A stretch of DNA of 64,000 bases from IMG/VR virus record IMGVR_UViG_3300049048_000052, positions 62,001-126,000 of that record, one strand, 5' to 3'. Positions 5,863-59,942 of the stretch are shown here, in pieces (within the stretch, counting starts at the first letter, position 1; every line of letters begins with the position of its first letter). The notes beneath the pieces are model-generated. The model had not been told where the DNA came from and made no database searches. It saw only the letters and a program-made list of their open reading frames with translations. Both the position numbers and the translations under genes were made by a program.

Positions 5863-8800
5863 ATGGCTAAGAAGAAGATTAATAGGCCTAGTTCCTCAAA
5901 GAGGGGATTCGCCAGTAGTGGTAGCATAATAGGTGGCTTCGGCAGTCGAGGCCCCAAGGGTAGCTCTGCTTATGAGGTGTGGAAAGAGCTAGGTAATGAT
6001 GGGGACGAGCAGCAGTTCCTACTAAGTATTAGGGGACCTGTTGGTGGTCCAGGTAAGTCAGCATATGAAGTCTGGTTAGATGAAGGCAACACTGGAACAG
6101 TAGGTGATTTCATCTATGCGTTACGCCGTCTCTCAGGTGGGGATGGTATCTCAGCCTATGACATATGGTTATCACTTGGTAATGTTGGTACTGAGGAAGG
6201 ATTCCTACAATCACTTAAGGGACCAATGGGTCCACAGGGTCCTCAAGGTAAGTCAGCATACCAAGTATGGTTAGACCAGGGTGTTATAGGTACTGAGTCT
6301 GACTTTATAAATGCATTAAGGGGACCAGCTGGTCCCACTGGTCCTAGTGGAAGTGTAGGACCTACTGGTCCCATTGGGCCAACAGGTCCCCAAGGATCTA
6401 CTGGTTCGGCTGGCCCTCGGGGTGCTGATGGTGTTACTGGTAAGTCAGCATATCAGGTATGGCTTGACCTAGGTAATATGGGTACCGAGCAACAGTTCCT
6501 TAATTCATTAAGAGGAAGTAATGGTGCTCAGGGCCCCCAAGGTATACAAGGCGCAACTGGTGCTAATGGGGTAGATGGTGAGTCTGCCTATAGCCTATGG
6601 TTATCCTTGGGTAACATGGGTACCGAGGAAGAATTTCTAGCCTCCTTTGTAGGACCAATGGGTCCACAGGGTCCTCAAGGTATACAGGGTGAATCTGGTT
6701 TAACCGGACCTAAGGGAGATACTGGACCCATAGGTTTGACTGGACCACAGGGTATTCCTGGTGAAGTAGGACCTAAGGGAGATCAAGGTGATACTGGTCC
6801 AGCAGGACCACAAGGTCCCATTGGTGCTCAAGGTATACAGGGTATACAAGGTGAGGTAGGACCTGCTGGTTTAACTGGGCCAATAGGCCCTGTTGGTCCC
6901 ATTGGACCTAAGGGTGAACCAGGAGATACAGGACCTGAGGGTCCACAGGGAGTCCAGGGTATACAAGGTGAGATAGGACCTCAGGGTATTGAGGGCCCCA
7001 TCGGAGCAACAGGACCACAAGGACCCTTTGGAGACTCAGCATATCAAGTATGGTTATCAGAGGGTAACCTAGGATCTCCCACTGACTTCCTGGATTCCCT
7101 AATAGGTGCACAGGGACCAACAGGTGCAATAGGACCGCAGGGTGAGATTGGTCCCATCGGACCCCAAGGACCACAAGGTATTACTGGTGCGCCAGGTCCC
7201 CAGGGACCTGCTGGTAACAATGGTGCCATAGGTGCAACAGGTCCCAAGGGTGATACTGGTGATACCGGACCACAAGGACCAATGGGACCCGAGGGACCCC
7301 AAGGTATACAAGGATTAACCGGAGAGACTGGACCTAAGGGTGACACTGGAGATCAGGGTCCTCAGGGTATACAAGGATTGATAGGGGCAACAGGAGCAAC
7401 AGGCCCACAGGGACCTAAGGGTGACACTGGTGAGCAGGGTATACAAGGTATAGCTGGTGCTACAGGTGCCACTGGACCCCAAGGTATACAAGGACCTATA
7501 GGTCCCTCTGGACCTCAAGGTGCTACGGGTCCAGAGGGACCCACTGGTGCAACGGGGGCTACCGGACCCAAAGGGGATACAGGTGATTCAGCATATCAAG
7601 CATGGTTAGCAGCAGGTAATACGGGCACAGAGGCAGACTTTCTTGCCTCTCTAGTAGGACCTCAGGGTCCAACCGGCGCTACGGGAGCAACAGGACCAAT
7701 AGGACCTGAGGGACCAGCTGGCCCTCAAGGTCCTGGCTCAGGCGATGTAATGGGGCCTGCTAGTTCTACTGTTACTGGAATAGCTATCTTCAGTAGCAAT
7801 ACAGGTAAAGCTATACAAAGTTCCACTGTTACTATTGATGTAAGCAATAATCTTAGTACAGCAGGAAACTTAAGTACTACAGGATCTGGTTACATTAGTA
7901 CTGCAAGGCCCATATTTTTGGGTACCTATACAGTAGCGGGGTTACCTACAGCATCAAGTTGGACCAATGCCATTGCTATTGCTACTAATGCTAATGCAGG
8001 TAATGGTGCCGCAGTTAGATCTGATGGTGCTAACTGGATTGATATGAGTTCTAACAGAGCAGCGAGTACAGATATGAACTCAGCTATGTTTGGGGCTCAG
8101 AGCTTTACGCCTAATGGTATCCCCCGTACCAATGGTAACTCAAGTAGACAGTTATTAAGCTCAAATGTAACCATTGATGCTAACAATGTACTGACTATAC
8201 CGGCATCCGGTAACCTTAAATTAAATAGTCCTGCCTTCCTTGGTACATACACAGTAGCAGGACTACCTGCTGCCGCTAGTTGGACTAATGCAATCGCAAT
8301 TGCCACTAACGCTAATGGGGGTGGGGGCACTATTGCAAAGTCTAATGGAACCAGCTGGTTAGATATAGTACAAGGTAAGACGGTAACTACTGCTACTAAT
8401 ATCATACCTAGTATTGCATTATCAGATACTGCACCATCAAGCCCTAGCAATGGGGACTTCTGGTTTAACTCTAGTCAATTAAAGTTAAAGGTTAGATATT
8501 TTGATGGTACAAATACCCAGTGGGTAGATGTATTACCTACTGGAGGCAGTAGTAGTACTGGGGTAAGCGTAGGTGATGTTGCTCCTGCAAGTCCTACTAA
8601 TGGAGCCCTATGGTGGGATAGTACTGTAGGTAAGTTAAGAATATATTATACAGACAGTGACTCTAGCCAATGGGTGGATGCCACATGGAACGGTAATGTA
8701 TCTAACCTTCAACTGTCCTCAGGTACAGCAGGCTCGCCCTCCCTATCATTTAGTGGGGATACAGGTACAGGACTCTACTTAGCATCAGCAGGTAACCTGG

Positions 8801-9165
8801 GTATAAGGGCAGCGGATACAGTATGGGTTGGTTCAGGTACTACACCGGCCACCACTACTACCCCTATACAGTCAGGTACTACAGCTAAGGCATTCGGTAG
8901 GTTCGTTGGATCTACTGCTACCATTAGTAAGTCCTACAACGTCAGCTCAGTAGTAAGGAATAGTTTAGGGGCATACACTGTTAACTTTACCCAGGCTATG
9001 CCTGATGCTAACTTTATAGTGGTGGGTGCGGGTGAGGCAGGCTCCAATAACGTAGCTGATGTTGTGGTCTATGCAAGAACAACCACCTCTGTATCCCTAG
9101 GTATGACCTTTGGTAATGGTAATAACTATGATGCCACTGTTAACTTTGCTATATTCAGTAACTAA
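5863..9165 (+). CDS. collagen-like tail fibre / adhesin
   Basis: long Gly-X-Y tracts interrupted by 8 SAY(E/Q)xW..GN.GT..FL.SL blocks; cyanophage-like [14 protein letters not shown] repeats; fibre-tip-like C-terminus. Confidence 0.85.
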
Positions 9166-20331: not shown

Positions 20332-20421
20332 TGGGATGTAGCTGGTAATTGGTAACCACACAAACTGTTAATTTGTACCCCTAAACATGGGGCCCTGGAG
20401 GTTCGAGTCCTCCCATCCCAG
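20332..20421 (+). tRNA. trnN: tRNA-Asn(GUU) with long variable arm
   Basis: acceptor TGGGATG/CATCCCA, G73, U1:A72; ACAAA-CTGTTAA-TTTGT; variable stem CCCC-TAAACAT-GGGG; T arm GGAGG-TTCGAGT-CCTCC; no CCA. Confidence 0.85.
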
Positions 20422-21840: not shown

Positions 21841-22893
21841 TTGTCTTACCTAAGTGTAAAGACAGTGCGTAAATTAGCAAGTATACAGAAGATTGTAAGT
21901 GTAGAAGCCATTGAGGGTAAAGATAGAATAGTACAGTGTGGGGTCCTTGGCTGGTCAATGGTTACTCAGAAGTCTAATAACTTCCAAGTGGGTGACTACT
22001 GTGTGTTCTTTGAGATAGATAGTATATTACCTGAGGCAGAGTGGTCAGCCTTCTTAGAAGGTAAGACTAGGATCAGGACTAGGAAGTTTGGTGGTGTATT
22101 AGCACAAGGTCTCATGTTACCCATCGATGCTATACCTGAGGTAGAGTCACATCTACGTCAAGTGGATGGGGATATCGAAGGTCTAGATCTAACAGAGCTA
22201 TTAGGTGTAATACAATGGGAGCCTCCTGTTGATGCTAATACTGGTGAGAGTAGAGGTAACTTCCCTACCCATATCATTAGTAAGACCGATGAGATCAGGA
22301 TACAGAGTTGTCCTAAGGTCTTAGAGGAATTGAAGGGACTACCTTGGTATGCTGCCCTTAAGATGGATGGCTCCAGTGCTACCTACTTCTGGGATGATGC
22401 CCCGCCTAAGATGGATATGTCCCCAGGCTTTGTCAGTTGCTCACGTAATATGAGAAAGAGTGAGGACTCTCATTTCCATCAGGTTGCGCTGAGGTATGGA
22501 CTAGATGAGATATTGAAGACCAATGATTACCTAGTATTCCAGGGTGAGGTAGTAGGTCCAGGTATTCAAGCTAATAGGTTAGGACTTAAAGAGTTAGACC
22601 TATTCATATTTAACGTATATGACAGAAGGGAGAAGAGATACTTAACCCTATCTGAGGCTCTGCAAGTATGTAAGTTTGGTAAGCTCAAGCATGTACCCAT
22701 TATCGATCAAGGGGAGTCCTTTGATCTAACTCAGGAGGCATTAGTCCAAATGAGTATAGGTGAATATGAGGGCACTAAGAATCCTAGAGAGGGTATCGTA
22801 GTGCGCCCTCAGACTCCCGTCTATAGTAATGTATTGAGGGACAGACTGTCCTTCAAAGTAGTTAATCCTAATTATCTGTTGAAGTATGAATAG
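21841..22893 (+). CDS. ATP-dependent RNA ligase (Rnl2/DRB0094-like) with N-terminal OB-like domain
   Basis: motif I KMDGSS, FQGEVVGPGIQ, motif IV EGIVVR, motif V FKVVNPNYLLK; start probably GTG at ~21866. Confidence 0.9.
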   Translation: MSYLSVKTVRKLASIQKIVSVEAIEGKDRIVQCGVLGWSMVTQKSNNFQVGDYCVFFEIDSILPEAEWSAFLEGKTRIRTRKFGGVLAQGLMLPIDAIPEVESHLRQVDGDIEGLDLTELLGVIQWEPPVDANTGESRGNFPTHIISKTDEIRIQSCPKVLEELKGLPWYAALKMDGSSATYFWDDAPPKMDMSPGFVSCSRNMRKSEDSHFHQVALRYGLDEILKTNDYLVFQGEVVGPGIQANRLGLKELDLFIFNVYDRREKRYLTLSEALQVCKFGKLKHVPIIDQGESFDLTQEALVQMSIGEYEGTKNPREGIVVRPQTPVYSNVLRDRLSFKVVNPNYLLKYE

Positions 22894-32440: not shown

Positions 32441-33037
32441 ATGGGATGCTTTGATAGCACCTGTGCATTGACGAGGACCTCTATCCATCATGGTGACGAG
32501 GTCCTTTATGTTCAGGTTCAACCTGATGATGCAATGGACACCTATAGCTTAGTGCATGAATTCTGGAGAGTTAAAGCTCTAGCCAAATACCATGCAGAGT
32601 GTGAAGACTTAATAAAAGAGAACCCGGCACATGCTAAGTTATTTGAGATCCAAGAGCGGCAAGTTAGAAGGTTTATCCGTCATGTAGCCATTGGTATATA
32701 TGATGATTATGGCTCTATCGAGGGCTTTGATAACGAGGACAGTGTGACTAGAAGGGATTGGATGGAGTTTCAATTCATGATTCATAGGAAGGCGGCTGAG
32801 CTATTTCTAGGTGAGTCCTTGGATCCAAATAGTCTATTTGATCAGTTAGATAGGCTAGTAGAGAAGTGTTTCTCAGCTCGTATCCAACTCTTTGGTCATC
32901 ATCTTATAGGTGCCCAACACTTTGATAGGGAAGAGTTAGCTCTACAGGAGTTAGTGATTGAGGCTACTCAACTCATGATCAATGAGAAGAAAGAATATAT
33001 TAGAATCAATTGGGATGAAGATGATGAAGGACAATGA
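32441..33037 (+). CDS. conserved hypothetical phage protein
   Basis: MGCFD.TC..T..SI..GD.V N-terminus; YDDYG.IE motif. Confidence 0.7.
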   Translation: MGCFDSTCALTRTSIHHGDEVLYVQVQPDDAMDTYSLVHEFWRVKALAKYHAECEDLIKENPAHAKLFEIQERQVRRFIRHVAIGIYDDYGSIEGFDNEDSVTRRDWMEFQFMIHRKAAELFLGESLDPNSLFDQLDRLVEKCFSARIQLFGHHLIGAQHFDREELALQELVIEATQLMINEKKEYIRINWDEDDEGQ

Positions 33038-33552: not shown

Positions 33553-34299
33553 ATGAATAAGCCACTATGGTTACACGCTCTCATAGCCCAGATAACTGAT
33601 ACTAAGAAGAGAGCGGAGGGCATCAAGAAGTCCGTATATCAGAAGTTACAGAAGGCTACTCTCTTCGTAGCTACACTAAAGGAGTACACCCCATTAGTAG
33701 AGGGAGGTATACAGTACACATCTGAGGGTACATCAATCGTACCTGAATCAGTACCTCTACTATTGGATGAGTTCAATGAGGCTGTCTCCAAACTATTAAA
33801 TGAGATGGCTACCCAGGATTGGGGCAATACAAAGGCTAAGGCCGATGTTATTATTGATGATATAGTTATTGTTAAGGATGCACCTGTAACATTCCTAATG
33901 GCGTTACAGAGTCAGCTAATTGATTATAGAACTTTGTTTGATCATGTACCCACTCTAAGTCCCGTGGACAAGTGGGAATATAATGCAGGTCAAATGGTAT
34001 GGAGCACACCAGCTACCATTACTAATAAGGAACAAGTAATTAAGGAGTGGGTACCTATCTTCCAACCTACAGAGCACCACCCAGGTGAGGCCAAGGAAGT
34101 ATCTAGGACAAAGCTAGAGGGTACATGGGAGAGCCGTAAGTTTAGTACTGCACTACTCCCTTCCCACAGGAAAGAATTGCTACAGAGGGTTGATAGACTA
34201 ATTGAGGCGGTAAAGGTGGCACGTGAGGAGGCCAACCGTATTCAAGTAGAACCCAAGGATGTAGCTACAAGTATCATTGGGTACCTAATGGGTGCCTGA
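33553..34299 (+). CDS. conserved uncharacterised coiled-coil protein (DUF7873-like by recall), cognate of the downstream tRNA-mimic RNA
   Basis: ATQDWGNTKAKADV..D...APVTFLMALQSQL.D...P...W; F.PTEHHP; G.W....FS.AL....ELL.RV..L.EAVK.AREEAN. Confidence 0.7.
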   Translation: MNKPLWLHALIAQITDTKKRAEGIKKSVYQKLQKATLFVATLKEYTPLVEGGIQYTSEGTSIVPESVPLLLDEFNEAVSKLLNEMATQDWGNTKAKADVIIDDIVIVKDAPVTFLMALQSQLIDYRTLFDHVPTLSPVDKWEYNAGQMVWSTPATITNKEQVIKEWVPIFQPTEHHPGEAKEVSRTKLEGTWESRKFSTALLPSHRKELLQRVDRLIEAVKVAREEANRIQVEPKDVATSIIGYLMGA

Positions 34300-34712
34300 T
34301 GGTAAACGGCGTAGGCTAAGGTTAAAGGTGTATAGGTAATAGTGTAGGTTCGAATCCTGCCCTTCCCATATATGGGAAGGTAGTCCAACTGGTAGAGACT
34401 GTCCAATACACTATATAAGACTGAGCATTAAGTTCAGATTATCGCCCTAGACTAAGTCTAAGGACAACAGCTCAGGTCGACTGTCTAGGACAACATTGAC
34501 CCACGTTGGTTCGAATCCAACCCAGGCCGCTTGGGGGCGACCCTATATGGGTAGGTAGCTGTCACACTTCTACCCCTTTCTTGGCCTGGTAGACTAGAGG
34601 TTAGTCAGGTCTTTATTAGATTGATCCTAGACAACTGGAAATGAGAATACTGAGATCACTGTTGATGGGGGATTACTAATGCAAGGCATACTGCATGGTA
34701 ATCCCCTTCCTA
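34300..34712 (+). ncRNA. tandem circularly permuted tRNA-mimic RNA (two YrlA-like modules)
   Basis: module 1: T arm 34344-60, closed acceptor CCTTCCCA-TATA-TGGGAAGG, D arm 34383-99; module 2: T arm 34505-21, CCAGGCC/GGCCTGG, D arm GACT-AGAGGTT-AGTC, closing TGTCTAGGA/TCCTAGACA; 3' hairpin GGGGATTAC/GTAATCCCC. Confidence 0.8.
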
Positions 34713-36683: not shown

Positions 36684-37472
36684 ATGGATCTGGCAGTCAG
36701 GATCAAGGAATTCTATGAGTATGCATACCGCACCTTCCTACCCAGGAGGATGCCAGTCATACTTAGAGTAGATGGTAAGGCATTCCACTCTTATACAAGG
36801 GGTATGAATAGACCCTTTGATGAGAGATTGGAAGAAGTAATGAACCTTGTAGCTATTAAGCTATGTAAGGAAATACAAGGTGCTCAGATAGCCTATGTGC
36901 AATCTGATGAGATCAGTATATTAATTCATGGTTATAAGAAGCTCAATAGTGAGTCATGGTTTGGTAATAATGTACAGAAGATGACCAGTGTTAGTGCTGG
37001 TATAGCTAGTGCATGGTTTACCTACCACTCATCTAGGTTAACTACTGTATCTGAGGATATAGGTAATACCCAACAGTTTATAGAATCTAAGCTAAAGCCA
37101 GCAGTATTTGACTCTAGGGTATTCGTACTCCCTGAATCAGAGGTATGTAACTACTTCATATGGAGACAGCAGGATGCTACTCGCAATAGTATCTCTATGC
37201 TTGCCCAGTCTTTATACTCCCATAAGGAGTTAAATGGGGTTACATGTAATCAGATGCAGGAGCTCTGTTTCCAGAAGGGTCATAACTGGAATGATCTACC
37301 TATCATTAGAAAGAGGGGTAGATGTATTCGTAAGTTTATTAGGTATACACCTGTAGCTGGAAGACCTGAGGGTAATACAGTTGCTAGATCCTATTGGGAT
37401 GTAGACTATGAGACTCCTATCTTTACTGAGAATCGTAACTATATTGAAGATCTATTAAAGACATATGAGTAG
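36684..37472 (+). CDS. thg1: tRNA(His) guanylyltransferase Thg1/TLP
   Basis: RVDGKAFH, YVQSDEIS, FDSRV, NYF.WRQ.DA.RNSI. Confidence 0.93.
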   Translation: MDLAVRIKEFYEYAYRTFLPRRMPVILRVDGKAFHSYTRGMNRPFDERLEEVMNLVAIKLCKEIQGAQIAYVQSDEISILIHGYKKLNSESWFGNNVQKMTSVSAGIASAWFTYHSSRLTTVSEDIGNTQQFIESKLKPAVFDSRVFVLPESEVCNYFIWRQQDATRNSISMLAQSLYSHKELNGVTCNQMQELCFQKGHNWNDLPIIRKRGRCIRKFIRYTPVAGRPEGNTVARSYWDVDYETPIFTENRNYIEDLLKTYE

Positions 37473-50117: not shown

Positions 50118-50396
50118 ATGAAACCAGGACCTAAGAAGGGTAGTAGTCAGAGTAAATCCCATGTTGCCAAGAGGGCCAAGGCTGTAAAAGGTAAGGCCAA
50201 TGGTATGTTTAAGGATGGAAGACGTTCCTATCGTTCCATAGCGGGAGCTAGGAATAGCGATGGAAAAGTTGTGCATCACAAGGACGGTGATAGGACCAAT
50301 AATTCAAGATCTAATCTAAAGGTCCTGAATGATGGTCCTAGTAGGCCAGGTAGGAAGACAACTAGTAAGCATGAAAGACTTACTAGACGTAAGTAG
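50118..50396 (+). CDS. small HNH endonuclease-like protein
   Basis: VVHHKDGDRTNNSRSNLKVL. Confidence 0.75.
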   Translation: MKPGPKKGSSQSKSHVAKRAKAVKGKANGMFKDGRRSYRSIAGARNSDGKVVHHKDGDRTNNSRSNLKVLNDGPSRPGRKTTSKHERLTRRK

Positions 50397-50567
50397 CCAG
50401 TGTAGCTTAAAAGGTAAAGCGTACCCCTCTCAGGGTATACCGAAAGGGTCCATAGGTAATAGGTGTAGTTGCAAGATTCTGTGAGAGTTATAAACTCCGT
50501 ATTCGGCAGAGTCCCAGACTGCACAACTATACCTATGGATATGAGGGTTCGATCCCCTTCACTGGCG
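50396..50567 (+). ncRNA. 172-nt tRNA-like RNA with a giant variable-region domain
   Basis: GCCAGTG/CACTGGC plus G; D arm GCTT-AAAAGGTA-AAGC; TACCC-CTCTCA-GGGTA; inserted helices TCCATAGGTA/TACCTATGGA, GTGTAGT/ACTGCAC, GATTCTG/CAGAGTC; T arm GAGGG-TTCGATC-CCCTT. Confidence 0.78.
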
Positions 50568-50654
50568 TTGACTAAGATAGAACAATGAGACATAAAGAAA
50601 TGCCCCTCTATGTAAGACACATAAGAGGGGGTCCAATTAACTTAGGAGTAAATA

Positions 50655-50969
50655 ATGATAAATCCAGTATCAGAGATATTATTAGGGGAATCCAAAGAGG
50701 GAGTCCAGTTTATGACACCGATGGCTGCGGCAGCTAAGGATATATATGTAAGAGCTTTAAGAGCTGGATTAGATGTAACATTAACCGCAGCTAACCAAGA
50801 GGTGAGTATAGATCCTCAGTCTGGACTGTTAGAGGCAAGCTTGAATCTATGTGAGGTCGAGGGATATAGACCCTCGGTAGCTGAGTATTATAAGTTAGTG
50901 GATATCATGACAGGGGCCCTAGCTGCCCTTAAGGAAGTTAAGAACGAATGGAAAGCTCCTACTAAATAG
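50655..50969 (+). CDS. hypothetical protein
   Basis: AGGAG RBS. Confidence 0.65.
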   Translation: MINPVSEILLGESKEGVQFMTPMAAAAKDIYVRALRAGLDVTLTAANQEVSIDPQSGLLEASLNLCEVEGYRPSVAEYYKLVDIMTGALAALKEVKNEWKAPTK

Positions 50970-57704: not shown

Positions 57705-58095
57705 GAGGGACCTCGCTGACGCCAAGTTACGTGTTAAGGAGATAGAGGATAAGTTACAGGCCACTCAGCTTGTAAGGGCCTCTAGCCCAGAGTTTAAAGA
57801 TAAGATGGTAGGACCTTACAATATAAGTAGGTTCCATCATGTTCTTGATCTATTGGTTGCAGGTAGGACCTGTGTCTTCCGGCATGAATCCTATGGGGAA
57901 TATGTTGTATATACCCATAAGGAGACAGGTCATGTTAAGGTAAGGAAGACGAAGCCAGGTCCTAATGAAGGGATTATGGCTATCCAACCACCCTATCAAC
58001 AGATCAATGACCAAACTATATTCAGATGTATGGTCCTGTCTGATACGGGGGAGTGGTTTGTTTATCCTGAAGAGGATAAAGATGAGAAGCCCTAG
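57643..58095 (+). CDS. hypothetical protein
   Basis: likely start MKPEEV. Confidence 0.6.
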   Translation: MTVLVKQGELLMKPEEVAVLERDLADAKLRVKEIEDKLQATQLVRASSPEFKDKMVGPYNISRFHHVLDLLVAGRTCVFRHESYGEYVVYTHKETGHVKVRKTKPGPNEGIMAIQPPYQQINDQTIFRCMVLSDTGEWFVYPEEDKDEKP

Positions 58096-58429
58096 AGTAG
58101 CGCTCATTATCTTGCTACTAAGTCTAGTAGCAGCACCTGTTTTGGCAAGGAAACCTAATCCTAAGGGTGCAACCTTCTGTGAACTGGGTAGCGGCTACTG
58201 GACTGTAACTATAGTCTCGGGTATCTCTGGAGAGGAGATGTCAGTAGTTATCTCAGAGTTCCTTGCTAAGGAAGAGCTGATCACTTACTACACTTTTATG
58301 GGCCTATGCAATAATAGGACTCCTAGAGAGTTGTGGGTACAGGGCCTTAATGAGGCCAGTGCTAAGAAGGTCTACAACTTCCTGAGAAGGAGGTATCCCG
58401 ATAGGGAAGTGTATAACATTAGACCATAA
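57965..58429 (+). CDS. putative secreted protein
   Basis: signal peptide MRSPRVALIILLLSLVAAPVLA (start ~58082). Confidence 0.55.
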   Translation: MKGLWLSNHPINRSMTKLYSDVWSCLIRGSGLFILKRIKMRSPRVALIILLLSLVAAPVLARKPNPKGATFCELGSGYWTVTIVSGISGEEMSVVISEFLAKEELITYYTFMGLCNNRTPRELWVQGLNEASAKKVYNFLRRRYPDREVYNIRP

Positions 58430-58489
58430 ATCTTAGGGCGTAAGCCCTTATTCATTCCTCAGTGGCGCAGTGGATAGCGCACCCGCCTT

Positions 58490-59179
58490 TAGGATAGGAG
58501 CACTTCTAGGGGAAACCCTTAAAGTGAATGTGGTTAAATTCAGGGAAGACTAAGTAGATTATGATCAAACTCCCAATGACAGTTAGGACATAGAGGTACT
58601 AAGTTGTCTACAGAGTTAATGTCGTTAACTAAGGTTTCATGTGGAAAACTAGAGATGGCCTTTCTATGGGCTATTTCAACATGTTTGTTATACCCACAGT
58701 TAATACAACAAGACCAGTCGAGTTTTGCTGCTACAGCTCTAGCCCTTGCTCTAACTAAAGCATAGGCTGAGGACCTGTGATGTTTATTGTACATGGCTTC
58801 TTCTAAAGTGACATTTAGATTTAGTCCCTTACGATGAGATCCAAAGCAGGATTTACAGTAGGTTCTGGAGTTACTTATAGGAGTGGTGCATACCAAGCAT
58901 TTATTCTCGGGTTTCCTCTTGGGGAAATTACGATTATTATGTGTAGCAGCACAACTCTTACTACAGAACTTAGGGTTAGTTGTTTCCTTATTACAGTTGA
59001 GACAATTCATAGTTTATATGTTAATCCTGAGCCAAGCTATTCGAAAGCCCTATTATATCATGGGTTCGAATAGAAGGTGCAGAGACTTAACAGCCACCAC
59101 CTAAGGTCATAAGACTATGGTGAAGATAAAGTCCAGACTACAAACACTCTTGAGTGGCAGCTAAAGCTGTAGTAGGAGG
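58490..59179 (+). mobile_element. group I intron (tRNA-Leu(UAA)-intron-like) inserted after U34
   Basis: P AAATTCAGGGAA 58536, Q AATCCTGAGC 59023, R GTGCAGAGACT 59077, S AAGATAAAGTCC 59123; P1 CTT/GAG, P10 TAG/CTA; terminal G59179. Confidence 0.88.
58540..59010 (-). CDS. intron-encoded HNH homing endonuclease (antisense)
   Basis: Cys-rich Zn fingers; CINCG..VEIAH..N...NLVPLCPNCH.EFD. Confidence 0.85.
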   Translation of the reverse strand: MNCLNCNKETTNPKFCSKSCAATHNNRNFPKRKPENKCLVCTTPISNSRTYCKSCFGSHRKGLNLNVTLEEAMYNKHHRSSAYALVRARARAVAAKLDWSCCINCGYNKHVEIAHRKAISSFPHETLVNDINSVDNLVPLCPNCHWEFDHNLLSLP

Positions 59180-59237: not shown

Positions 59238-59942
59238 ATGAGAATCATGACATATAAGGGCAGGCATGATTACTATGATCATGCTATGGCCTATGGTACT
59301 GATGAGAAGATTGTCTATGTTAGGCATCCTAAGGAGTTTCACTTAGACCAGGTATTCAAGGGACGTGAGATACGTCAATATTATAGAGAGTTAAATCATT
59401 GGTTACCTCAGGATATAAGGGCCTCCGTCCTAGGTTTCTGTGGTACGTTGTACCCTGTCTATAGATACGAGGACACATACGGCATGTCTCCTGAGTACCT
59501 ACTCGGTAAGCAGAAAGACGATGCTAGAAGAAGGTTAGAGGCTCTGCTTAATAAGCATGTCCTTTCTCCCTGGAATTATAAAGACGCCCTCCTCAAAGAC
59601 AGGATGGTCAAAGAGATGATAGGTAAGGAACTGGGAATTGAGACCTTTAATAAGTTAAGGTCTCCTTGTTTTCATATGCAGATGGAGTTTGGACGTACTG
59701 GTTTTCAGTATACCCTGACCACAAATCCTATACTTGTAGAGTTAGGGTTCCAGGTTATAGAAGAACCTATGTATTGTTATCAAGAGATCTATATGTTTAT
59801 AGATAACCTTAATGCAAGTATAGGTCCCGTAGATGAGTCCACTAAGTCCGATGATGTGATTGCAAAGTCTAAGGGTCATGATCCTAAGACATCCTTTAGA
59901 ACTAATAGTCCTGGTAAGAAGGCCAGGAGGAGAAGTAAGTGA
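59238..59942 (+). CDS. conserved hypothetical large-phage protein
   Basis: MRI...DYYD..A.YG.D..I.Y.R; NP.L..LGF; YQEI.MFI; SKGHD..TSFR. Confidence 0.7.
   Translation: MRIMTYKGRHDYYDHAMAYGTDEKIVYVRHPKEFHLDQVFKGREIRQYYRELNHWLPQDIRASVLGFCGTLYPVYRYEDTYGMSPEYLLGKQKDDARRRLEALLNKHVLSPWNYKDALLKDRMVKEMIGKELGIETFNKLRSPCFHMQMEFGRTGFQYTLTTNPILVELGFQVIEEPMYCYQEIYMFIDNLNASIGPVDESTKSDDVIAKSKGHDPKTSFRTNSPGKKARRRSK

What the first reader, a model, noticed from the sequence alone, without database searches (positions are those of the whole stretch)
50396..50567. 172-nt tRNA shell carrying a ~100-nt multi-helix domain in its variable region
Seen: canonical acceptor (GCCAGTG/CACTGGC, G73), D arm and T arm. The anticodon hairpin has only a 6-nt loop (CTCTCA). 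Then come a GAAA hairpin and a stacked domain of 10-, 7- and 7-bp helices with a terminal GAGT/ACTC hairpin. Its first G is the last base of the stop codon of the upstream HNH gene. It is not tmRNA: the D stem is intact, there is no G3-U70 and no tag ORF. Inference: a second natural tRNA scaffold, matured by tRNA-processing enzymes to present an RNA domain of unknown function; architecturally a sister of the nested tRNA.
Basis: partly seen in the sequence, partly recalled or inferred. Interest (0 to 1): 0.82.

Follow-up and report, generated by a model that had tools for sequence, protein, structure and literature searches.

The report
tRNA-shaped phage RNA with giant arm
A soil jumbo-phage contig carries a 172-nt gene that folds as an almost complete tRNA, but it has a one-base-short anticodon loop and a ~100-nt double-stranded rod in place of the variable loop; it is most likely a non-decoding tRNA mimic, though no relative or expression data could be found to prove that.

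Summary
Window 50396-50567 (+) scores 38.7 bits on the Rfam tRNA model (threshold 29). It has a 7-bp acceptor stem, G73, D and T arms and all tertiary-contact bases. The anticodon loop has 6 nt (CUCUCA). The variable region is ~103 nt: a small GAAA element plus one long interrupted hairpin of 37 pairs. It is a rod, not a multi-helix junction. The fold is far more stable than shuffles (z -6.8). The + strand folds better than the - strand, and the rod has 5 G-U pairs and no mismatches.

The insert matches no Rfam family, is not repeated in the window and is not a credible intron. The upstream gene is an HNH endonuclease that has lost its C-terminal tail exactly at RNA +1.

The phage is an orphan. 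Every homologue search returned only the source contig and no RNA-seq run was listed, so covariation and expression remain untested.

The same phage carries two permuted tRNA-like (YrlA-like) RNAs next to a DUF7873 gene, plus an RNA ligase and a Thg1-like enzyme. The rod's 5' strand resembles the first of these RNAs, but only suggestively.

Best reading: a non-decoding tRNA mimic, acting as adaptor or decoy. Confidence is about 0.4. The main rival is a disrupted tRNA relic.

The parts
50396..50567 (+). Whole tRNA-shaped RNA (172 nt, no encoded CCA)
   Evidence: Rfam RF00005 full-length match, 38.7 bits against a gathering score of 29. MFE z = -6.8. The - strand folds 7.7 kcal/mol worse.
50396..50402 (+). 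Acceptor stem, 5' strand. It pairs with 50560-50566, and the discriminator is G at 50567.
   Evidence: Seven Watson-Crick pairs read from the sequence. Same pairing in the cmscan alignment.
50405..50420 (+). D arm: 4-bp stem and an 8-nt loop with G18 G19
50422..50438 (+). Anticodon-like hairpin: 5-bp stem and a 6-nt loop, CUCUCA. One base is missing compared with a normal anticodon loop.
   Evidence: one deletion in the loop relative to the model. In one search ARAGORN reads a two-base 'anticodon' once the insert is removed.
50440..50447 (+). CC-GAAA-GG element. It is either a 2-3 bp GAAA mini-hairpin or a single-stranded ACCGAAAG motif. The motif matches 7 of 8 positions of the Ro60-recognition motif GNCGAAN0-1G.
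   Evidence: Fold. The motif definition comes from PMC4201824. The match was read by eye and is short, so it is a lead only.
50448..50540 (+). Rod: one long interrupted hairpin of 37 pairs, including 5 G-U and no 1x1 mismatches, that replaces the variable loop
   Evidence: No Rfam match at E <= 10. No second copy in the window.
50543..50559 (+). T arm: GAGGG / TTCGATC / CCCTT
50118..50396 (+). Upstream HNH endonuclease ORF (92 aa). It lacks its C-terminal tail, and its stop codon overlaps RNA +1.
   Evidence: PF13392 and PHROG HNH families. Homologues of 117-122 aa carry an extra basic tail of about 25 aa.
50603..50630 (+). Downstream GC-rich hairpin with no U-tract. It may mark a transcript end or a processing site.
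   Evidence: It is not called as an intrinsic terminator on the + strand.

Best explanation
It is a non-decoding tRNA mimic made by the phage.

- The shell keeps everything needed to fold into the tRNA L-shape. It should therefore be recognised by RNase P, the 3'-end and CCA enzymes and other tRNA-binding proteins (inferred).
- The 6-nt anticodon loop takes it out of normal triplet decoding.
- The variable loop has been replaced by a long double-stranded rod of about 37 bp. This is the functional payload: a binding platform or bait for a protein.

The most likely action is as an adaptor or decoy in the conflict over tRNAs between phage and host. It could titrate a host nuclease that attacks the variable arm or body of tRNAs. 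Alternatively, like Y RNAs, it could tether a stem-binding protein to tRNA-handling enzymes.

Shown: the fold, its stability, its strand bias and its uniqueness. Inferred: processing, partner binding and the decoy or adaptor role.
For: - The tRNA shell is canonical and every tertiary-contact base is present.
- With the insert removed in silico, ARAGORN calls a tRNA whose loop gives only a two-base anticodon.
- The rod is highly stable (z = -5.5).
- The rod has 5 G-U pairs and no A-C oppositions, and the + strand folds 7.7 kcal/mol better than the - strand. This is the signature of RNA-level, strand-specific structure rather than a DNA palindrome.
- The sequence is identical in two assemblies, with no indel variants.
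- The same phage invests in tRNA mimics and tRNA repair:
  - a YrlA-like RNA at 34312-34432;
  - a second permuted tRNA-like RNA at about 34505-34607;
  - an RNA ligase and a Thg1-like enzyme;
  - six ordinary tRNAs, one of them a tRNA-Asn with an unusually long variable arm.
- The rod's 5' strand is 76% identical over 38 columns to the stem and T-arm region of the YrlA-like RNA. Only 3-6 of 3000 shuffles reach that score.
- Published work shows that host defences cleave the variable arm of tRNA-Tyr, and that phage tRNAs with altered variable arms resist cleavage or act as decoy or supplement (PMC13096335).
Against: - No homologue exists in any collection searched, so there is no covariation.
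- No RNA-seq run was listed.
- The similarity to the YrlA-like RNA is not an outlier across the whole window. A coding site at 32544-32580 scores as high.
- A covariance model of the rod does not recover the YrlA-like RNA at E <= 10.
- The Rfam YrlA and Y_RNA models do not hit the target.
- No Ro60-sized ORF is present in the window.
- A young insertion into a tRNA gene could look the same.
Confidence: 0.4

Rival explanations
1. Relic. An ordinary phage tRNA gene was inactivated by a one-base loss in the anticodon loop and by insertion of a hairpin-forming segment into the variable loop. It may be tied to the same recombination events that truncated the neighbouring HNH gene. It has no function of its own.
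For: - It is a singleton with no relatives.
- It has a non-functional 6-nt loop.
- It lies at a recombination junction with a truncated homing endonuclease.
- Endonuclease-driven rearrangements at tRNA loci that leave truncated endonuclease genes are documented for T6 SegB (PMC13096335).
Against: - Both the shell and the rod are intact. All tertiary bases are kept.
- The rod has 37 pairs with only G-U departures and z = -5.5.
- There is a strand bias in favour of the transcribed strand.
- The insert is not a repeat found elsewhere in the window, or with its 5' motif elsewhere in the contig.
Confidence: 0.27
2. A working tRNA with an extreme class-II variable arm. It would be charged, for example by SerRS, which reads a long variable arm plus G73 and ignores the anticodon, or by GluRS for anticodon CUC. 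It would be used in unconventional decoding, such as a doublet or frameshift-prone reading by the 6-nt loop.
For: - G73, a 7/5 acceptor/T geometry and an arm that emerges exactly where class-II arms do.
- SerRS identity rests on a long variable arm plus G73 (PMC7609411).
- The loop reads C-U-CUC-A, which is U33, anticodon CUC and A37 with nucleotide 38 missing.
Against: - A 6-nt loop is not compatible with normal triplet decoding.
- The arm is about five times longer than any class-II arm and would clash on the ribosome (inference).
- The window shows no clear sign of recoding.
- The D arm is class-I type.
Confidence: 0.12
3. A cis-acting processing element of the HNH transcript. RNase P cutting at G+1 would remove the last base of the stop codon and leave a non-stop HNH mRNA. 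That would limit production of a potentially self-damaging endonuclease. The rod and the downstream hairpin would protect or terminate the 3' product.
For: - The stop codon overlaps RNA +1.
- There is no separate promoter-like site between the ORF and the RNA.
- A hairpin lies downstream.
Against: - The overlap follows from a truncating junction and may be accidental.
- A plain tRNA would do the same job, so the rod and the short loop remain unexplained.
- HNH homologues elsewhere lack any such element.
Confidence: 0.08
4. An intron-containing tRNA whose insert is removed to give a normal tRNA. Removal could be by self-splicing, by a BHB-type endonuclease, or by RNase III followed by the phage RNA ligase.
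For: - ARAGORN in intron mode proposes tRNA-Gly(CCC) with an 85-nt intron.
- The phage has an RNA ligase and a bona fide group I intron elsewhere.
Against: - The ARAGORN model has an anticodon stem of only 3 pairs plus 2 mismatches.
- The insert has no group I or other ribozyme match at E <= 10 and is too short for a group I core.
- No bulge-helix-bulge is visible at the borders.
- Removing the variable-region insert still leaves the 6-nt loop.
Confidence: 0.05

Closest known systems
Class II (long variable arm) tRNAs: bacterial Leu, Ser, Tyr and Sec
   Same: The extra helix emerges between the anticodon stem and the T stem. The cloverleaf is otherwise canonical. G73 is present, as in tRNA-Ser and tRNA-Sec.
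   Different: Known arms have 3-9 bp (regions of about 10-25 nt), whereas this one has 37 pairs in about 103 nt. The anticodon loop has 6 nt instead of 7. The D arm is class-I type.
YrlA / bacterial Y RNAs (Rfam RF02553; Chen et al. 2014, PMC4201824)
   Same: A tRNA-like module is joined to a long stem that, in Y RNAs, binds a protein (Ro60/Rsr). They occur in phages, and two YrlA-like RNAs sit in this same phage. There is a possible ACCGAAAG / GGUCC motif at the base of the rod.
   Different: YrlA is circularly permuted: its acceptor stem is closed by a loop and its ends form the long stem. Here the acceptor stem is open and an anticodon-like hairpin is kept. The Rfam YrlA model does not hit the target. 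No Ro60 gene is nearby.
tmRNA
   Same: It has a tRNA-like acceptor and T-arm domain with a large insertion between the D region and the T arm.
   Different: There is no tag reading frame, no pseudoknots and no G3-U70. The D stem and anticodon hairpin are intact. ARAGORN and Rfam report no tmRNA.
Intron-bearing tRNA genes: group I introns in bacterial and phage anticodon loops, and archaeal BHB introns at non-canonical sites
   Same: A tRNA gene is interrupted by about 100 nt.
   Different: The insert lies in the variable region. It has no group I core and no BHB motif. Its removal would not yield a normal anticodon loop.
Phage tRNAs with altered variable arms or anticodon loops that evade or soak up tRNA-cleaving defences (T5 and T6 tRNA-Tyr against retron-Eco7 and Septu; PMC13096335, PMC10264068)
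   Same: A phage-encoded tRNA-type molecule departs from the norm at exactly the sites attacked by host nucleases. It lies next to a homing endonuclease in a phage that carries RNA-repair enzymes.
   Different: Those are functional decoding tRNAs with small changes. This one carries a 100-nt rod and is probably non-decoding. No defence system or cleavage was tested.
Engineered 'tRNA scaffolds' and natural tRNA-linked RNAs (mascRNA, MHV68 tRNA-miRNA units)
   Same: A tRNA fold is used as a processing and stability handle for another RNA element.
   Different: In these the payload lies in the anticodon stem (engineered scaffolds) or 3' of the tRNA (natural units), not in the variable region. This comparison rests on general knowledge and was not tested here.

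Membership tests
tRNA (Rfam RF00005) | Cloverleaf that scores above the family's gathering threshold | tested here: met
   38.7 bits against 29, with model positions 1-71 all matched.
tRNA (Rfam RF00005) | Conserved tertiary-interaction nucleotides (U8-A14, 15-48, G18/G19 with T-loop 55/56, G53-C61, T54-A58) | tested here: met
   Read directly from the sequence: U8, A14, A15 with U48, G18, G19, A21 and TTCGATC.
tRNA (Rfam RF00005) | Seven-nucleotide anticodon loop with a triplet anticodon | tested here: not met
   The loop is CUCUCA, 6 nt. ARAGORN calls 'tRNA-???' with a two-base anticodon once the insert is removed and calls nothing with it present.
tRNA (Rfam RF00005) | Variable region of 4-5 nt (class I) or about 10-25 nt (class II) | tested here: not met
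   About 103 nt lie between the anticodon stem and the T stem.
tRNA (Rfam RF00005) | Aminoacylation and use in translation | not testable with these tools
   This needs acid-gel or in vitro charging assays.
YrlA / Y RNA | Match to the family covariance model (permuted T arm, closed acceptor stem, D arm, all inside a long stem) | tested here: not met
   No YrlA or Y_RNA hit on 50300-50700 at E <= 10. The neighbouring RNA at 34312-34432 does align over the full model, at 26.8 bits against a gathering score of 69.
YrlA / Y RNA | Encoded next to a Ro60/Rsr (TROVE) gene | tested here: not met
   The flanking ORFs are HNH, unknowns and a DprA-like protein. The only window ORFs above 351 aa are collagen-like and Mtd-like. 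The rest of the 252-kb contig was not examined.
YrlA / Y RNA | Ro60-recognition motif GNCGAAN0-1G (or GGUCCGA) in the 5' strand of the stem | tested here: inconclusive
   ACCGAAAG matches 7 of 8 positions and is followed by GGUCCAU at the base of the rod. The motif is too short for statistics.
tmRNA | Detection by ARAGORN or the Rfam tmRNA models, a tag ORF, and G3-U70 | tested here: not met
   No tmRNA call. Pair 3-70 is C-G.
Group I intron in a tRNA | Group I catalytic core, with insertion in the anticodon loop | tested here: not met
   No Intron_gpI hit in the region at E <= 10, although the model finds a real intron at 58479-59155. The ARAGORN intron model is structurally poor.
Repeated mobile element (MITE-like hairpin) | Several copies in the genome | tested here: not met
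   There is no second copy in the 64-kb window by BLAST or by a covariance model of the rod. The 5' motif occurs only twice in the whole contig, in the target and in the YrlA-like RNA.

The most novel reading that the evidence does not exclude
The RNA is a natural, complete tRNA scaffold. It would be cut out by RNase P and the 3'-end enzymes and would display a protein-binding double-stranded rod derived from the phage's own Y-RNA-like stem. It would work together with the DUF7873-linked permuted tRNA mimics as a phage toolkit that captures or misdirects host tRNA-targeting or RNA-quality-control proteins. This would be an unpermuted counterpart of Y RNAs and the first tRNA known to carry a functional domain in its variable arm.
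Probability: 0.2. Interest if true: 0.75.

Novelty: new variant of a known kind. Interest (0 to 1): 0.45.

Why it matters
If it is expressed and processed, it would show that the variable arm of a tRNA can be expanded about five-fold into a functional module. That would add an unpermuted design to the small set of natural tRNA mimics (tmRNA, YrlA, viral tRNA-like ends). It would also point to a new phage tactic in the conflict over tRNAs with host defences. It would offer a natural template for tRNA-scaffold RNA expression. If it is a relic, it is only a curiosity, showing how homing-endonuclease traffic scars phage tRNA islands.

Tried and rejected
1. Known RNA family for the insert. Rfam at E <= 10 on 50300-50700 gave only the tRNA hit and a chance HCV element.
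2. tmRNA. Neither ARAGORN nor Rfam reports one.
3. Intron. ARAGORN's intron mode gives tRNA-Gly(CCC) with an 85-nt intron, but the anticodon stem has 3 pairs and 2 mismatches. Rejected.
4. Repeat or MITE. There is no second copy.
5. Homologues by DNA similarity. INPHARED phages gave no match.
6. Homologues by DNA pattern. Five IMG/VR scans and one JGI metagenome scan were run. IMG/VR returned the source contig itself plus one unrelated tRNA-like stretch (L002). The metagenome scan returned two chance hits in a coding region.
7. Homologues by synteny. The DprA-like and 104-aa neighbours have no close relatives.
8. Link to the HNH gene. HNH homologues lie in unrelated phages with no RNA after them.
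9. Expression. No RNA run was listed. Laying reads showed only the source contig and two identical 151-nt pieces away from the RNA.
10. Homology of the rod to the YrlA-like RNA at 34312-34432. The pairwise shuffle test gives p of about 0.002. Window-wide, the score is matched by a chance coding site, and a covariance model of the rod does not find that RNA. I keep this as a lead, not a result.
11. DUF7873 as a recognisable RNA-binding fold. The AlphaFold model is confident (pLDDT 88), but it has no PDB or BFVD match and no sequence match to solved structures.
12. Stop-codon recoding that would call for a suppressor tRNA. No clear signal.
13. Overlapping ORFs (50276-50620 on the - strand, 50329-50484 on the + strand). 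No family match.

Full report
**Source and context.**
- The window is positions 62001-126000 of IMG/VR contig IMGVR_UViG_3300049048_000052. This is a 251,780-bp phage contig from a soil metagenome.
- Nearly all genes lie on the + strand.
- The window holds six ARAGORN tRNAs and a group I intron.
- tRNA-Tyr has a long variable arm, so the host is bacterial (general knowledge of class-II tRNA-Tyr).

**Check of the observation.**
- The 172-nt stretch 50396-50567 (+) matches the Rfam tRNA model end to end at 38.7 bits, against a gathering score of 29. Window-wide E is 1.3e-4. The model places about 100 nt as an insertion in the variable region.
- Reading the sequence gives:
  - a 7-bp Watson-Crick acceptor stem with G73;
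  - U8 and A9;
  - a 4-bp D stem with loop AAAAGGUA;
  - G26;
  - a 5-bp anticodon-like stem with loop CUCUCA, 6 nt;
  - a T arm GAGGG / UUCGAUC / CCCUU.
- All bases used for the tRNA tertiary fold are present, including an A15-U48 Levitt pair.
- The variable region has a CC-GAAA-GG element and then one long hairpin at 50448-50540. The hairpin has 37 pairs (18 A-U, 14 G-C, 5 G-U), bulges and two internal loops, and ends in the GAGU/ACUC hairpin.
- MFE is -71.2 kcal/mol against -43.8 +/- 4.0 for dinucleotide shuffles (z = -6.8). The insert alone gives z = -5.5.
- The reverse strand folds at -63.5 kcal/mol. With 5 G-U pairs and no A-C oppositions, this favours an RNA-level structure on the + strand.
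- Standard ARAGORN does not call the gene. After in-silico removal of the insert it calls a 72-nt tRNA of undetermined identity with a two-base anticodon.
One correction: the insert is one coaxial rod, not a multi-way domain.

**What it is not.**
- The insert matches no Rfam family at E <= 10.
- No tmRNA is reported.
- The same library finds a true group I intron at 58479-59155 but nothing of that kind here.
- ARAGORN's intron mode proposes tRNA-Gly(CCC) with an 85-nt intron. The resulting anticodon stem has only three pairs and two mismatches, so I reject it.
- The insert is not repeated in the window by BLAST or by a covariance model of the rod with filters off.
- Overlapping ORFs have no family support.

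**The neighbouring HNH gene.**
- ORF 50118-50396 is an HNH_3 endonuclease of 92 aa. Its TAG stop shares its last base with RNA +1.
- Its closest relatives (59-62% identity, 117-122 aa) lie in unrelated phage contigs. There they are followed directly by protein genes, with no tRNA or Rfam hit.
- Those relatives carry a basic C-terminal tail of about 25 aa. It is missing here, and the ORF ends exactly at the RNA.
- The juxtaposition therefore looks like a recombination junction at a homing-endonuclease insertion, not a conserved gene-RNA unit. Truncated endonuclease genes fused to tRNA segments are reported for T6 SegB (PMC13096335).
- If RNase P cuts at G+1, the HNH message loses its stop codon. 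This follows from the sequence, but its relevance is speculative.

**Search for relatives and expression.**
- DNA similarity: INPHARED phages gave no match.
- DNA patterns: the IMG/VR scans returned only the source contig, apart from one unrelated stretch, L002. A structure-tolerant pattern in the JGI metagenomes gave two chance coding hits.
- Neighbouring proteins: they have no close relatives among 5.8 billion clusters.
- Expression: no RNA-seq run was listed. The only DNA runs are the source sample and one with two identical 151-nt fragments outside the RNA.
That is the main limit of this report.

**Other tRNA-like RNAs in the phage.**
- A low-threshold Rfam scan found a full-length YrlA (Y RNA-like) alignment at 34312-34432: 26.8 bits against a gathering score of 69, local E = 8e-4. 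It shows the hallmark permuted layout: T arm, acceptor stem closed by a loop, and D arm, all inside a long stem.
- By eye, a second permuted tRNA-like module follows at about 34505-34607, with a 54-nt insertion in its closed acceptor loop.
- Both lie just after a DUF7873 gene at 33553-34299 (PF25283, E = 1e-59).
- Distant DUF7873 genes (about 30% identity) are also followed by permuted tRNA-like RNAs, often then by a tRNA. This holds for a Micromonospora contig and three Bacteroidota MAG contigs.
- The window also encodes an RNA ligase at 21841-22893 and a Thg1-like enzyme at 36684-37472.
- It also has a tRNA-Asn with an unusually long variable arm.
- No Ro60-sized ORF is present in the window.

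**Is the rod related to the YrlA-like RNA?**
- The rod's 5' strand and the stem and T-arm region of the 34312 RNA share 29 of 38 aligned columns, including an identical 11-mer.
- Only 3-6 of 3000 dinucleotide shuffles reach the observed score under three scoring schemes.
- By hand, the basal helices line up on both strands, with two double-sided pair changes.
- However, across the whole window the score is barely ahead of a chance site inside an ordinary ORF.
- The 11-mer family is mildly over-represented in coding sequence.
- A covariance model of the rod does not recover the YrlA-like RNA at E <= 10.
- The Rfam YrlA model does not hit the target.
- I treat the relationship as a lead with roughly even odds.
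- The sequence ACCGAAAG followed by GGUCC at the base of the rod resembles the Ro60-contact motifs quoted by Chen et al. (PMC4201824). It is too short to test.

**Most likely mechanism (confidence about 0.4).**
- It is a non-decoding tRNA mimic.
- The intact L-shape determinants should give RNase P and 3'-end processing and stability (inferred from established tRNA biology).
- The 6-nt loop disables triplet decoding.
- The rod, kept as RNA-level structure on the transcribed strand, is the payload: a double-stranded binding platform.
- The phage has a tRNA-repair and tRNA-mimic repertoire. Host systems are known to cleave tRNA variable arms and anticodon loops (PMC13096335, PMC10264068). An adaptor or decoy role in that conflict is therefore the best fit.

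**Rivals.**
- A relic tRNA disrupted by an insertion (0.27).
- A charged, unconventional class-II-like tRNA (0.12). SerRS uses a long arm plus G73 (PMC7609411).
- A processing element for the HNH message (0.08).
- An excised insert (0.05).

**Comparison with known classes, and verdict.**
- It passes the tRNA model but fails two defining tRNA features: loop length and variable-region size.
- It fails the YrlA model, topology and Ro60 adjacency.
- It fails every tmRNA and intron test.
- It is best filed as a new variant of tRNA-like non-coding RNA, with function unproven.
- I found no description of a tRNA with a variable arm of about 100 nt in the papers searched. That is absence of evidence in a limited library.
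- Interest is moderate (0.45). The anatomy is unusual and clean, but it is a singleton without expression or conservation data.

Noticed in passing
window 34312-34432 (+): A YrlA-like (Y RNA-like) permuted tRNA mimic: T arm, acceptor stem closed by a loop, and D arm inside a long stem. The Rfam YrlA alignment is full length at 26.8 bits against a gathering score of 69. It lies 13 nt after a DUF7873 gene (33553-34299), and no Ro60 gene was seen in the window.
   Followed up: partly
window ~34505-34607 (+), flanks ~34440-34625: A second permuted tRNA-like module in tandem, found by eye and not called by Rfam. It has T arm GTTGG/TTCGAAT/CCAAC and acceptor strands CCAGGCC and GGCCTGG separated by a 54-nt insertion, then TA and a D arm.
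   Followed up: partly
L009 6001-7072; L017 4001-5013; L018 4001-5040; L019 56-530: A cassette recurs in which a DUF7873 gene is followed by one or two permuted tRNA-like RNAs and often a tRNA. It is seen in a Micromonospora contig and three Bacteroidota MAG contigs at about 30% protein identity. DUF7873 gives a confident AlphaFold model (pLDDT 88) with no PDB or BFVD fold match, and no paper mentions it. It may be a new protein partner of Y-RNA-like tRNA mimics.
   Followed up: partly
L009 4967-5109 (+): A 143-nt candidate with a tRNA shell (7-bp acceptor stem, D arm, T arm) and a GC-rich insert of about 70 nt that starts with GGUCCGG. It lies 900 nt upstream of the Micromonospora DUF7873 gene, inside a tRNA array. 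Fold z is only -1.1 and chance combinations are common in that array, so the evidence is weak.
   Followed up: partly
window 20332-20421 (+): ARAGORN calls a 90-nt tRNA-Asn(GTT) with a variable-arm hairpin of about 20 nt (CCCC/GGGG). This is unusual for the class-I Asn family, and it is not reported by Rfam even at E <= 1.
   Followed up: no
window 21841-22893 and 36684-37472 (+): An RNA ligase (PF09414 with a PHA02142 OB-fold) and a Thg1-like 3'-5' nucleotidyltransferase (PF04446). Together they suggest a phage tRNA-repair toolkit.
   Followed up: no
window 58479-59155 (+): A group I intron (Rfam 54.1 bits) with a large insertion of about 480 nt in P5/P6. It lies between ORFs 57965-58429 and 59238-59942, which are probably two exons of one gene. 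An ORF on the - strand (58540-59010) lies inside it.
   Followed up: no
window 50118-50396 (+): The HNH endonuclease lacks the basic C-terminal tail of about 25 aa found in all three homologues. The catalytic H-N-N-H residues are kept.
   Followed up: yes
window 50427-50432 and 50482-50487 (+): The 6-nt loop CUCUCA is the exact complement of UGAGAG in the upper rod. The chance of such a match within the RNA is about 4%. It could allow a loop-helix or intermolecular contact.
   Followed up: no
window, 13 sites (e.g. 9537, 35516, 37059, 48137, 62017): The 11-mer ATAGGTAATAG, allowing up to one mismatch, occurs 13 times against 4.5 +/- 2.1 expected. Most sites are on the + strand inside ORFs, so this is probably codon or dinucleotide usage rather than a signal.
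   Followed up: partly
window 5863-9165 (+): A 1100-aa ORF with long collagen triple-helix repeats, followed by two Mtd-like (tail-fibre-type) ORFs.
   Followed up: no
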